Assembly (NCBI GenBank): GCA_053919585.1
Contig: CM132790.1
Source of the DNA: Euprymna scolopes
Taxonomy: Eukaryota
Length of the DNA stretch: 64,000 nt
Reading direction: 5' to 3' (one strand)
Each line of letters opens with the position of its first letter. Position 1 is the stretch's first letter. Both the position numbers and the translations under genes were made by a program. The notes under the pieces are model-generated. The model was not told the origin of the DNA, did no database searches, and worked only from the letters and a program-made list of their open reading frames with translations. Below are positions 3,667-55,994 of the stretch, in pieces.

Positions 3667-3717
3667 AGCTGAAACAATAATGTAACTAAACAGAAAAAAA
3701 CGGTAATAAAAAACAAC

Positions 3718-21648: not shown

Positions 21649-22881
21649 TAAATAAGGAACACAAAAATAATTCTAGTTGTTGTAACAAGCATATAAAATA
21701 ACTCCTTTTTTATATTACTTATAAAATTCCAATCGTAAAATAGCGCAGTAACGGAACTTATTTGCCTGCCATTCACGTTTGTATTAGTTTGACATTTGTG
21801 AGTTGACGCCATAATAATTAGAAACCATGTTTGTAGCAAGCAAATTCTCTACGGTCCCTCAAATAATAGCCTTGGTGTGTTCGTATATTCATTACTCAAA
21901 GAAGCATAAATCCTCCCTTTTATAGATTTTATAGTCGTCACACTATTGTATATATTCCTGTGCGTGTGTGTATATGTGCGTAACGAATCTATATTATTGA
22001 GCATGTACATTTTTATAGTGTGATGGATTGATTCGGAAAATTTTTTGTTGTGTAATCTCATGAAGATTTACACGTGACATTTTTGTGTATGAGAGCTTGG
22101 TTGTGGTGGATGTCTTTTTAGCATGCACAGGAACTCAATAACAACATCTAATAATAGATGATCTTATATTATATATCCATGTGTGTGGATGTATGAGGAT
22201 TTTTTACAGATGTAAACAATGTGGAAGAGAAAAATACACTCAATTCCAATTCTTTTGATAGAATGTTTGCTTGTTTGTAAAAAAACAAACTCCTCTCATC
22301 ATTGTATTAGATAGTGTTTCTGAGATTTTTAAGAGTCTCCAGGCGATTTATCATGAACATCTATTTAGGGAATTGAAAAGAAACGTTTAGATTTTCTGAT
22401 GGCACCAAGCAGATTAAACGCACATACCCAAAGACACAGACATGCACATACACGCATAGAGTAATACATATTTGCACACAAACATACACACAAGTTCATA
22501 TATCTATCTGTGTATGTCTCTCTCTACNNNNNNNNNNNNNNNNNNNNNNNNNNNNNNNNNNNNNNNNNNNNNNNNNNNNNNNNNNNNNNNNNNNNNNNNN
22601 NNNNNNNNNNNNNNNNNNNNNNNNNNNNNNNNNNNNNNNNNNNNNNNNNNNNNNNNNNNNNNNNNNNNNNNNNNNNNATAGACATTCAATGAAAATCCTG
22701 TGATTATAAAAACTTAGAGATGTACTATTATTTACTTTTTTATATCAATAAAATCATTAGCGAAATATATGCAATTCGTTTACAGCTGTGATTTCGTTCG
22801 AAATTCTGCGTTAACAGCCTACTAATTTTCACCAACGGATAAACTATACATATGTGTATGGGGGAGTATGTTTTTGTAGAC

Positions 22882-22973
22882 GAGACAAATAATTGGTACT
22901 GTCGGTTGCAAGCCCGAAAATAAGGACCGTTTAAGGTATCATTATCAAGCTCTCTTCAGCCAATATTCGTCTC
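22882..22973 (-). ncRNA. Type I hammerhead ribozyme motif (probably inactivated: GAAA changed to GCAA)
   Basis: 5'-GAGACGAATATTGG CTGAAGA GAGCTTG...CGGGCTT GCAA CCGACA GTA^CCAATTATTTGTCTC-3'. Helix I has 14 bp with one bulge, followed by the CUGANGA box, a long helix II and a GUA cleavage triplet at 22899-22897. Confidence 0.8.
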
Positions 22974-22975
22974 TT

Positions 22976-23053
22976 TTGAAGAGAGCTTTATAAGGATACC
23001 TTAAACAACCCTTATTATCGGGCTTGAAACCGACGGTACTAATGATTTGTCTC
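22976..23053 (+). ncRNA. 5'-truncated hammerhead copy (lacks C3 and the 5' strand of helix I; intact GAAA and helix III)
   Basis: tTGAAGA GAGCTT.ATAAGG...CCTTAT..CGGGCTT GAAA CCGACG GTA ctaatgatttgtctc. GAAA at 23026-23029 and GTA at 23036-23038. Confidence 0.7.
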
Positions 23054-23160
23054 ATCTAACAACTGTCTGTGCACAAAAATACGCTCTTACATTTCGGATT
23101 TTACTTTTAATTGACCACTCTGATGTACTTCTTTTTCCAAAAAAACTAATCATAATCATA

Positions 23161-55114: not shown

Positions 55115-55603
55115 CAAATTTTTGTATTGATATTTATATTAAAACACGTTTCACGATTATAAAAAAAGATTAAATAAATCAATTTATATATAAGCCATGG
55201 AATTGCATTCATCTTCAGAAATCGAGCTTATTCTTATATTCTTGTAAGCATTAATTAGAATTAATCCCCTCTAATCATCTTTAGTGAAGTATAACACTTA
55301 ACTATATTCATGCAGATATTCTACATAATGTACACTTGCGTATTATGTGCGTTAAAAGGTTATAGTAAACAAAAACAACTTTCAGTATATATTTATGTAT
55401 GCGTATATAGTGTTTTTTACAATTTTTACCTATCAAAGTCCTTTGCCAGTTTGTGTCTTCAAACATGGAACTTTATGTTCTGATTAATACAGTTTTCGTA
55501 TTTATTATTATATTCTATTCGACCCAATATTATATAATCTGCAATTATCAAAAACTCATATATAAGCGTATTTTACGACCGGGAAATGCGGAGTGGCCTG
55601 CTA

Positions 55604-55661
<58 letters not shown>

Positions 55662-55667
<6 letters not shown>

Positions 55668-55876
55668 GTTTTATTTTTTATTACCGTATCTTTCTGTTAA
55701 GTTACATTATTATTTCGGCCAAACGGCCGTTTTTTTGGCCGTCTTTAACGTTCTCAGACTTTTACAGGGTTTTGTAAAAGTCTGAGGACGCTACAGACGG
55801 CCAGAAAACGGCCATGTAGCCGAAATTATAATGTAACTTAACAGAAAGATACGGTAATAAAAAATTAAACGCATAT
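55662..55876. repeat. About 105-bp-arm fold-back palindrome (6-nt loop, 55767-55772) of two head-to-head hammerhead copies
   Basis: 55662-55766 versus the reverse complement of 55773-55876, about 11 differences, mostly inside helix II. Abuts a (TA)n tract. Confidence 0.96.
55773..55843 (+). ncRNA. Type I hammerhead ribozyme motif with intact core
   Basis: TGTAAAAGT CTGAGGA(55782-88) c GCTACA gac GGCC agaaaac GGCC a TGTAGC c GAAA(55822-25) ttataat GTA(55833-35)^ACTTAACA. Helix I is AAGT/ACTT plus TGT/ACA. Caveats: C.C at the base of helix II and a weak helix III. Confidence 0.72.
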
Positions 55877-55928
55877 TTTTCTACAACAGTATTGAGCACT
55901 TTCTTTAGTTTTTATTAATTGCCATCTC

Positions 55929-55994
<66 letters not shown>

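What the first reader, a model, noticed from the sequence alone, without database searches (positions are those of the whole stretch)
55662..55876. Miniature fold-back element of two head-to-head hammerheads, with an intact core and compensatory changes between arms
Seen: a 215-bp palindrome whose arms each read as a type I hammerhead pointing outward. The plus arm has CUGAGGA, GAAA and GUA; the minus arm has CUGAGAA. The arms are identical over about 37 nt of the 3' tail, but most differences fall in helix II and keep the pairing: GCTACA/TGTAGC versus GTTAAA/TTTGGC (one C-G to A-U double change and two U.G wobbles). Established: Penelope-like pLTRs and retrozymes carry type I HHRs, and PLEs often leave inverted termini. 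Inference: this is a non-autonomous, PLE-mobilised ribozyme-only element whose arms came from two structurally conserved templates rather than by neutral decay. Transcription of either strand gives one sense ribozyme plus its own antisense, a possible cleavage-versus-dsRNA switch.
Basis: partly seen in the sequence, partly recalled or inferred. Interest (0 to 1): 0.85.

Follow-up and report, generated by a model that had tools for sequence, protein, structure and literature searches.

The report
Twin-inserted hammerhead-tailed Penelope-type retroelement copy
The palindrome is real, but it is one old, cut-short, head-to-head double insertion of a very abundant non-coding retroelement with a weakened hammerhead motif near its tail; this is a known, Penelope-style kind of insertion scar, not a special ribozyme switch.

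Summary
The fold-back exists. Its arms are 55667-55767 and 55770-55871, joined by GG, and as RNA it folds at -135 kcal/mol.

It is only part of a 265-bp unit (55667-55931). That unit also has a 60-nt tail on one side and sits between two (TA)n tracts.

The genome holds at least 14,000 such arms. All 48 inverted pairs I could read have one arm with the tail and one without. The inner ends are cut at variable points, and copy counts fall steeply towards the 5' end of a non-coding source element at least 1.3 kb long. This is a retroelement inserted by target-primed reverse transcription in the Penelope-like manner.

The hammerhead reading holds for the family. A sister family with a canonical minimal hammerhead differs by compensatory pairs in helices I and II. 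In this copy the motif is degraded:
- The plus arm has C.C at 10.1/11.1.
- The minus arm has CUGAGAA, which breaks the core at G8.
- Rfam finds no hammerhead.

The "compensatory" helix II changes occur only in this copy. Both arms share a derived C15.2-to-U change, so they came from one template lineage.

No excess of copies starts at the predicted cleavage site. I found no support for a cleavage-versus-dsRNA switch. The same scan has already noted this kind of element elsewhere in this genome.

The parts
55603..55666 (.). (TA)n tract abutting the 3' end of the tail-less arm
   Evidence: In 48 pairs most outer flanks carry long TA runs.
55667..55767 (-). Tail-less arm (sense on the minus strand), matching about positions 408-507 of the 576-nt reference copy L047:953-1528. 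It carries a dead hammerhead-like motif: CUGAGAA at 55751-55757 (G8 to A) and GUA at 55703-55705.
55768..55769 (.). Two-base filler (GG) at the head-to-head junction of the two 5'-truncated arms
   Evidence: Junctions differ in position and filler among copies.
55770..55871 (+). Tail-bearing arm, hammerhead-like part: helix I 5' strand 55770-55781, CUGAGGA 55782-55788, helix II hairpin 55789-55821 (C.C next to the core), GAAA 55822-55825, short helix III and loop, GUA 55833-55835 (predicted cut after 55835), helix I 3' strand 55836-55847.
55872..55931 (+). 60-nt tail present on one arm only, ending CTCCAC. Conserved in the family and in the sister family.
55932..55992 (.). (TA)n tract abutting the 3' end of the tail

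Best explanation
This is one dead insertion, about 6% diverged from the family consensus, of a high-copy non-coding retroelement. It was inserted by target-primed reverse transcription in the Penelope-like manner.

Two cDNAs of the element's 3' region were laid down head to head at a (TA)n site. One was primed at the RNA's 3' end and so carries the 60-nt tail. The other was primed about 60 nt upstream, at the only AUAU stretch there. Both stopped short, just 5' of the hammerhead domain, and were joined with two extra bases. That process makes the palindrome; the palindrome is not a designed fold-back.

Each arm carries a relaxed descendant of a Penelope-type minimal type I hammerhead. In this copy one arm is weakened (C.C at 10.1/11.1, U.G at 15.2/16.2) and the other is broken at G8.

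Shown: the family architecture, the tail asymmetry, the 5' truncation gradient and the cross-family covariation. Inferred: the twin-priming mechanism and the identity of the helper enzyme.
For: Copy number and gradient:
- 14,173 arms match a 26-mer across the predicted cut site at <=1 mismatch.
- 4,042 reach 15-40 nt further 5' and 1,669 further still. This is a 5' truncation gradient.
- Long arms run at least 1.3 kb and show no protein domain.

Architecture:
- 48 of 48 inverted pairs have one arm ending at the tail end and one ending about 60 nt earlier. Either arm can be the longer one at the centre.
- All ten close pairs I picked out by eye among the first 100 arms listed on contig C1 are (-,+), that is, 5' ends facing.
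- 43 short palindromes have different, asymmetric junctions.
- Non-inverted 5'-truncated copies exist.
- The left and right arm consensus sequences are identical.

Hammerhead:
- The sister family (2,299 exact hits) reads CUGAUGA, G10.1-C11.1, GAAAC, palindromic CAUAUG, GUA.
- Against this family it shows double changes that keep pairing at 10.1/11.1, 10.5, 10.6, 10.7 and in helix I.
- The 3' 100 nt stays over 90% alike between the two families.

Literature:
- Penelope-like insertions carry an adjacent inverted 5'-truncated copy, a tail at one end, and a (TA)n bias (PMC8557442).
- A purified Penelope-like protein nicks and extends both target strands and starts reverse transcription at two internal sites that delimit the tail (PMC11167929).
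- Minimal hammerheads, including pairs on opposite strands 100-700 bp apart, are known (PMC4209133).
Against: - No reverse transcriptase / GIY-YIG partner sharing this 3' end was found.
- The tail is 60 nt, not the published 30-40.
- Several copies share a similar GG-plus-TTCTGT junction, which could mean some palindromes were copied as whole units.
- Of the solo copies, (TA)n is always at the 3' flank but at the 5' flank in only one. So (TA)n may be made with the element rather than being the target.
- Rfam models do not recognise the motif.
Confidence: 0.75

Rival explanations
1. The palindromic units are copied as whole units from palindromic master copies, through a hairpin RNA read from flank to flank, rather than being formed anew at each insertion.
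For: Several independent copies, including the window's, share a near-identical centre: ACAG + GG + TTCTGT, or its complement. About 70% of arms end within about 25 nt just 5' of helix I.
Against: The shared centre occurs in both orientations relative to the tail (L002, L022 and the window versus L003, L011 and L027). Faithful copying cannot produce that. Junction position and filler vary widely. Arms of very unequal length are paired (L054, L051). No arm-specific fixed differences exist.
Confidence: 0.12
2. It is a SINE-like element moved by a LINE through L1-style twin priming, and the (TA)n tracts are 3' tails made with each cDNA rather than the target.
For: All 7 solo or unpaired arms have (TA)n at the 3' flank; only L047 has it at the 5' flank. 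Both outer ends of a head-to-head pair are 3' ends. Twin priming is established for L1 (my own knowledge).
Against: Classical twin priming gives non-overlapping segments, whereas here both arms hold the same region. The hammerhead, the one-sided tail and the inverted-copy syndrome are described for Penelope-like elements (PMC8557442, PMC11167929). Earlier notes of this scan report many hammerhead-bearing Penelope relics in this genome, and I saw other hammerhead motifs in the loci flanks.
Confidence: 0.08
3. One reading: a functional fold-back of two ribozymes kept by selection, with arms from two templates, acting as a cleavage-versus-dsRNA switch.
For: In the minus arm, four of five private changes fall in helix II and keep pairing. 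Under a simple neutral model that has probability about 9e-5 per arm.
Against: With at least 14,000 arms, about one such arm is expected per genome. The variant is unique, lies in the arm with G8 mutated, and folds differently in ViennaRNA. The arms share a derived base. The full transcript is a -135 kcal/mol hairpin. The copy is one of thousands of decaying insertions at 93-99% identity to the consensus.
Confidence: 0.03
4. It is a DNA-transposon MITE or foldback element whose hammerhead boxes are chance matches.
For: The loose box pattern is expected 1.2 times per 64 kb by chance. Rfam gives no hit.
Against: The ends are asymmetric (a tail on one side only, 48/48). There is a 5' truncation gradient, and solo truncated copies exist. 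Boxes plus helices occur in 1 of 300 shuffles. There is covariation with a canonical sister hammerhead.
Confidence: 0.02

Closest known systems
Minimal type I hammerheads of metazoan Penelope-like elements (Cervera & de la Pena 2014, PMC4209133)
   Same: CUGANGA, GAAA and GUH boxes; a long helix II; a short helix I with an internal loop; a 2-bp helix III. Thousands of dispersed, mostly solitary or oppositely oriented copies, and low expected activity as a monomer.
   Different: The pair next to the core is A-U, C.C or U.U rather than the conserved G-C. Loop 3 (AAUAAU) is no longer palindromic. The sister family in the same genome keeps both canonical features.
Penelope-like element insertion architecture (Craig et al. 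2021, PMC8557442; Frangieh et al. 2024, PMC11167929)
   Same: An inverted 5'-truncated copy abutting the main copy; an extension ('tail') at one end only; (TA)n at the insertion site; two alternative 3' ends that fit two reverse-transcription start sites.
   Different: No ORF and no direct pseudo-LTR. The tail is 60 nt rather than 30-40. The one-tail-per-pair rule is absolute here (48/48), which the papers I read do not report.
Metazoan non-LTR retrozymes (Cervera & de la Pena 2020, PMC7229834; Li et al. 2026 preprint, 10.64898/2026.07.22.740005)
   Same: Non-coding, hammerhead-bearing, probably dependent on Penelope-like elements.
   Different: Retrozymes are head-to-tail tandem repeats of 150-450 bp that give circular RNAs. 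Here the copies are dispersed, solo or head to head, and never tandem in the sample.
L1 twin priming (Ostertag & Kazazian 2001; from my own knowledge)
   Same: The second target strand primes internally on the RNA, which gives an inverted segment.
   Different: In L1 the two segments do not overlap. Here both arms copy the same 3' region.

Membership tests
Hammerhead ribozyme, type I (minimal Penelope-type variant) | CUGANGA box | tested here: met
   The plus arm has CUGAGGA at 55782-55788 and the family consensus is CUGAGGA. The minus arm has CUGAGAA, with G8 lost, so that arm does not meet it.
Hammerhead ribozyme, type I (minimal Penelope-type variant) | GAAA box and NUH cleavage triplet at the right places | tested here: met
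   GAAA at 55822-55825 and GUA at 55833-55835. Both are at least 90% conserved in 63 arms.
Hammerhead ribozyme, type I (minimal Penelope-type variant) | Conserved G10.1-C11.1 pair closing helix II | tested here: not met
   C.C in both window arms. My hand tally of the first 100 genomic arms: about 58 A-U, 26 C.C, 8 U.U, 1 G-C. The sister family has G-C.
Hammerhead ribozyme, type I (minimal Penelope-type variant) | Helices supported by compensatory changes | tested here: met
   Within the family there is almost none, since the copies are decaying. Between this family and the sister family there are double changes at 10.1/11.1, 10.5, 10.6, 10.7 and in helix I at 2.3/1.3. I read these by hand from the consensus strings.
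Hammerhead ribozyme, type I (minimal Penelope-type variant) | Palindromic 15.2-16.2 and loop 3 (capacity to form a dimer) | tested here: inconclusive
   The family has C-G plus AAUAAU, which is not palindromic. The window has U.G. The sister family has palindromic CAUAUG.
Hammerhead ribozyme, type I (minimal Penelope-type variant) | Score against the Rfam hammerhead covariance models | tested here: not met
   No hammerhead family at gathering score or at E<=10 in four stretches, including a copy with an A-U closing pair.
Hammerhead ribozyme, type I (minimal Penelope-type variant) | Self-cleavage after H17 | not testable with these tools
   Indirect record only. Arms starting at +1, 0 and +2 number 13, 30 and 14, against 14,173 reading through. 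No read-end pile-up. The canonical sister family also shows no peak, so this test may be blind to cleavage.
Penelope-like element (as a non-autonomous derivative) | Reverse transcriptase plus GIY-YIG ORF, or a coding partner with the same 3' end | tested here: not met
   No ORF with a Pfam match in the long copies. The partner was not found, and no further loci could be cut.
Penelope-like element (as a non-autonomous derivative) | Adjacent inverted 5'-truncated copy | tested here: met
   48 pairs in the held loci. All ten close pairs I picked out among the first 100 arms listed on C1 are 5'-to-5'.
Penelope-like element (as a non-autonomous derivative) | Tail extension at one end only | tested here: met
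   48/48 pairs have one tail. Its length is 60 nt against the published 30-40 (PMC8557442).
Penelope-like element (as a non-autonomous derivative) | Microsatellite (TA)n at insertion sites | tested here: met
   Whether (TA)n is the target or is made with the copy is left open.
Non-LTR retrozyme | Head-to-tail tandem repeats of 150-450 bp | tested here: not met
   No same-strand neighbours under 1 kb among the first 100 arms. All close neighbours are on opposite strands.
MITE / foldback DNA transposon | Symmetric terminal inverted repeats with fixed ends and a target duplication | tested here: not met
   The ends are asymmetric (tail on one side), inner truncation is variable, and solo half-copies exist.

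The most novel reading that the evidence does not exclude
The strict rule of one tailed and one tail-less arm in every head-to-head pair (48/48), together with (TA)n always at the 3' flank of each arm, would be a genomic record of an obligate two-site, two-strand priming step by a Penelope-type enzyme. The telomerase-related reverse transcriptase might itself lay down or extend the (TA)n tracts. If so, this family would have seeded thousands of (TA)n microsatellites in the genome.
Probability: 0.15. Interest if true: 0.6.

Novelty: new member of a known kind. Interest (0 to 1): 0.27.

Why it matters
For this locus, little: it is one decayed copy among at least 14,000 arms.

The family is useful as a natural record of how Penelope-type elements integrate. 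Thousands of twin insertions with a fixed tail asymmetry and variable inner junctions could test the two-strand, two-start-site model proposed from in vitro work.

The family also shows that a hammerhead can lose canonical features (G10.1-C11.1, the palindromic loop 3) while its carrier still amplifies. That fits the reports that cleavage is not needed for insertion.

Tried and rejected
- Rfam at gathering and permissive thresholds on the window, a solo arm, a copy with an A-U closing pair and the sister copy gave only spurious microRNA-like hairpin hits.
- ARAGORN on a long copy found no tRNA-like head.
- Pfam on the recurring small ORFs of the 5' body found nothing.
- A search for the window's helix II variant elsewhere found only the window itself.
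- A test for copies beginning at the predicted cut site found no excess in this family or in the sister family.
- RNA runs: the raw reads come only from oligo-dT single-cell libraries. The family is seen on both strands, with no start or end pile-ups and no circular junctions. This is uninformative on cleavage.
- Within-family pair counting shows decay, not covariation.
I did not try to read flanks by other means.
- An earlier-notes look-up by sequence was blank.

Full report
**What is in the window**

Bases 55667-55871 form an imperfect palindrome (79-nt arms, 89% complementary). The left arm reads as sense on the minus strand (55667-55767). The right arm reads as sense on the plus strand (55770-55871). 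Two bases, GG, join them.

The finding's limits leave out a 60-nt stretch (55872-55931, ending CTCCAC). Alignment of other copies shows it belongs to the unit. The 265-bp unit lies between (TA)32 and (TA)31.

As RNA the unit folds into one roughly 100-bp hairpin of -135.1 kcal/mol. An arm alone folds at about -17 kcal/mol.

**The hammerhead reading of this copy**

The plus arm has CUGAGGA, a long helix II hairpin, GAAA, a 2-bp helix III, GUA (predicted cut after 55835) and a helix I of 4 + 6 bp.
- A descriptor that asks for boxes and helices finds this site alone in the window, and hit 1 of 300 shuffled windows.
- The boxes alone are expected 1.2 times per window by chance.

The minus arm reads CUGAGAA. 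That puts A at the essential G8, so its core is not intact. Both arms have C.C where canonical hammerheads have G10.1-C11.1. Rfam gives no hammerhead hit, even at E<=10 on 300-600-nt stretches.

**The family**

The window lies in a 5.9-Gb genome, which earlier notes of this scan call a mollusc.
- A 26-mer spanning the predicted cut site occurs 14,173 times at <=1 mismatch.
- A 26-mer 15-40 nt upstream of the window's arms occurs 4,042 times at the same stringency.
- One still further upstream occurs 1,669 times.

So the window's arms are 5'-truncated. Long arms run at least 1.3 kb upstream (L047, L051, L054). They hold no recognisable coding sequence and no tRNA-like head. The copies I hold are 93-99% identical to the arm consensus; the window's arms are at 93.4-93.8%.

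**Architecture**

In the loci I hold, 48 of 48 inverted pairs have one arm that ends at the tail end and one that ends about 60 nt earlier. That earlier end is at the only AUAU stretch of the 3' region.
- Either arm can be the longer one at the centre. In L054 a truncated tailed arm faces a long tail-less arm. So the second arm is not simply a snap-back copy of the first.
- All ten close neighbour pairs I picked out by eye among the first 100 arms listed on contig C1 are (-,+), that is, 5' ends facing.
- Forty-three short palindromes show many different, asymmetric junctions.
- Non-inverted 5'-truncated copies also exist.
- The left-arm and right-arm consensus sequences are identical.

A copy-number gradient towards the 5' end, fixed 3' ends and variable inner ends are the marks of target-primed reverse transcription. 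They are not the marks of a cut-and-paste MITE.

**Fit to Penelope-like elements**

Published features are:
- an adjacent inverted 5'-truncated copy;
- a 30-40-bp tail at one end only;
- a (TA)n bias in some clades (PMC8557442);
- a purified enzyme that nicks and extends both target strands and starts reverse transcription at two internal RNA sites that delimit the tail (PMC11167929).

Minimal hammerheads scattered by the thousand, sometimes as pairs on opposite strands 100-700 bp apart, were described in 2014 (PMC4209133).

My reading is therefore a twin-primed Penelope-type insertion. The mechanism and the helper are inferred. No coding partner with this 3' end was found, and I could not cut more loci.

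**Is the hammerhead real for the family?**

Within the family the 63 arms show decay rather than covariation.

A sister family turned up in L012. It has 2,299 exact hits for its GAAAC-to-helix-I stretch, and 50 exact hits for its helix II including flanking core bases.
- Its 3' 100 nt is over 90% like this family's.
- Its motif is canonical: CUGAUGA, G10.1-C11.1, a 12-bp helix II, GAAAC, the palindromic CAUAUG, GUA, and helix I GGU/ACC.
- Position by position the two families differ by double, pairing-preserving changes: at 10.1/11.1 (G-C versus A-U in the majority subfamily), at 10.5 (G-C versus A-U), at 10.6 (U-A versus C-G), at 10.7 (U-A versus A-U), and in helix I (G-C versus A-U). I read these by hand from the consensus strings.

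This supports a conserved hammerhead fold in the lineage. The present family is a relaxed form: its loop 3 is no longer palindromic, and the closing pair is A-U (about 58%), C.C (about 26%, including this copy) or U.U (about 8%), by my hand tally. Subfamilies with a mismatch there still amplified. That fits the report that cleavage is not needed for insertion (PMC11167929).

**Any record of cleavage?**

If cut RNA served as template, arms should often begin at the base after GUA. Arms with three mismatched upstream bases number 13 at that position, 30 one base earlier and 14 one base later.

The canonical sister family gives 24, 17 and 15, against 3,558 arms that read through the site. So there is no support for cleavage, but the test may be blind if cut RNA cannot be used as template. 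Reads from two oligo-dT single-cell runs and contigs from two other runs show the family on both strands, with no pile-up of ends.

**The 'compensatory' arm differences**

- Both arms share C15.2 to U, seen in only 1 of 61 other arms. The other differences are private, five in the minus arm and two in the plus arm within the 66 compared columns. They add up to the observed distance between the arms. One template lineage and later decay are enough to explain this.
- The minus arm's helix II variant occurs nowhere else in the genome. Under a simple neutral model its pattern has probability about 9e-5 per arm, which means about one such arm per genome.
- It is an oddity. It lies in the arm whose G8 is lost, and ViennaRNA pairs the new UUUGGCC with GGCCAAA instead.

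**Open points**

- Several copies share a similar centre (ACAG, GG, TTCTGT) in both orientations relative to the tail. I cannot explain this fully.
- Unpaired arms carry (TA)n at the 3' flank in 7 of 7 cases, but at the 5' flank only in L047. So (TA)n may be made or extended at insertion rather than being only a target.

**Verdict**

A real palindrome and a real, degraded hammerhead relic, in an ordinary member of a known kind of element. Earlier notes of this scan describe the same kind elsewhere in this genome.

Noticed in passing
window 3667-3716: Another fragment of the same family (arm positions 454-503, 90% identity). A run of N lies on its 5' side and (TA)n on its 3' side.
   Followed up: partly
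window 22878-23057: A second, unrelated palindrome, flagged earlier in this scan as a hammerhead fold-back. I only read the sequence and saw no CUGANGA box in it.
   Followed up: no
L012:2680-2900 (minus strand): A sister family with a canonical minimal hammerhead (CUGAUGA, G-C closing pair, palindromic CAUAUG, GUA). It has thousands of copies, is also found as head-to-head pairs, and shares the 3' 100 nt with this family.
   Followed up: partly
L034:285-315, L049:665-698, L054:265-298, L039:2867-2907, L029:273-313, L024:3152-3187, L005:470-505: At least four other hammerhead-bearing repeat families lie in the random flanks of the fetched loci, about a dozen hits in about 150 kb. This genome is unusually rich in hammerhead motifs.
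   Followed up: no
L047:1156-1314, L051:202-432 (minus), L054:1877-2101: A small proline/serine-rich ORF beginning MYPYALSHTRNE recurs in the 5' body of the long element in three copies. No Pfam match; probably non-coding.
   Followed up: partly
L047, L048, L050, L052, L054, L055 (3' ends): In a subset of copies the tail runs on by about 8 nt (CAAAAAAC) before (TA)n. This may be a third 3' end variant or untemplated addition.
   Followed up: no
own genome, one search list: Eleven of the 30 arms that start at the A before the predicted cut site are preceded by a run of A's. This suggests deletions or template switches between the A-rich loop of helix II and this site.
   Followed up: no
L047:395-870: Two copies of another short repeat with a tRNA-type B-box-like stretch (GATTCGAACCCGG) lie next to a (TA)n tract. 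ARAGORN calls no tRNA.
   Followed up: no
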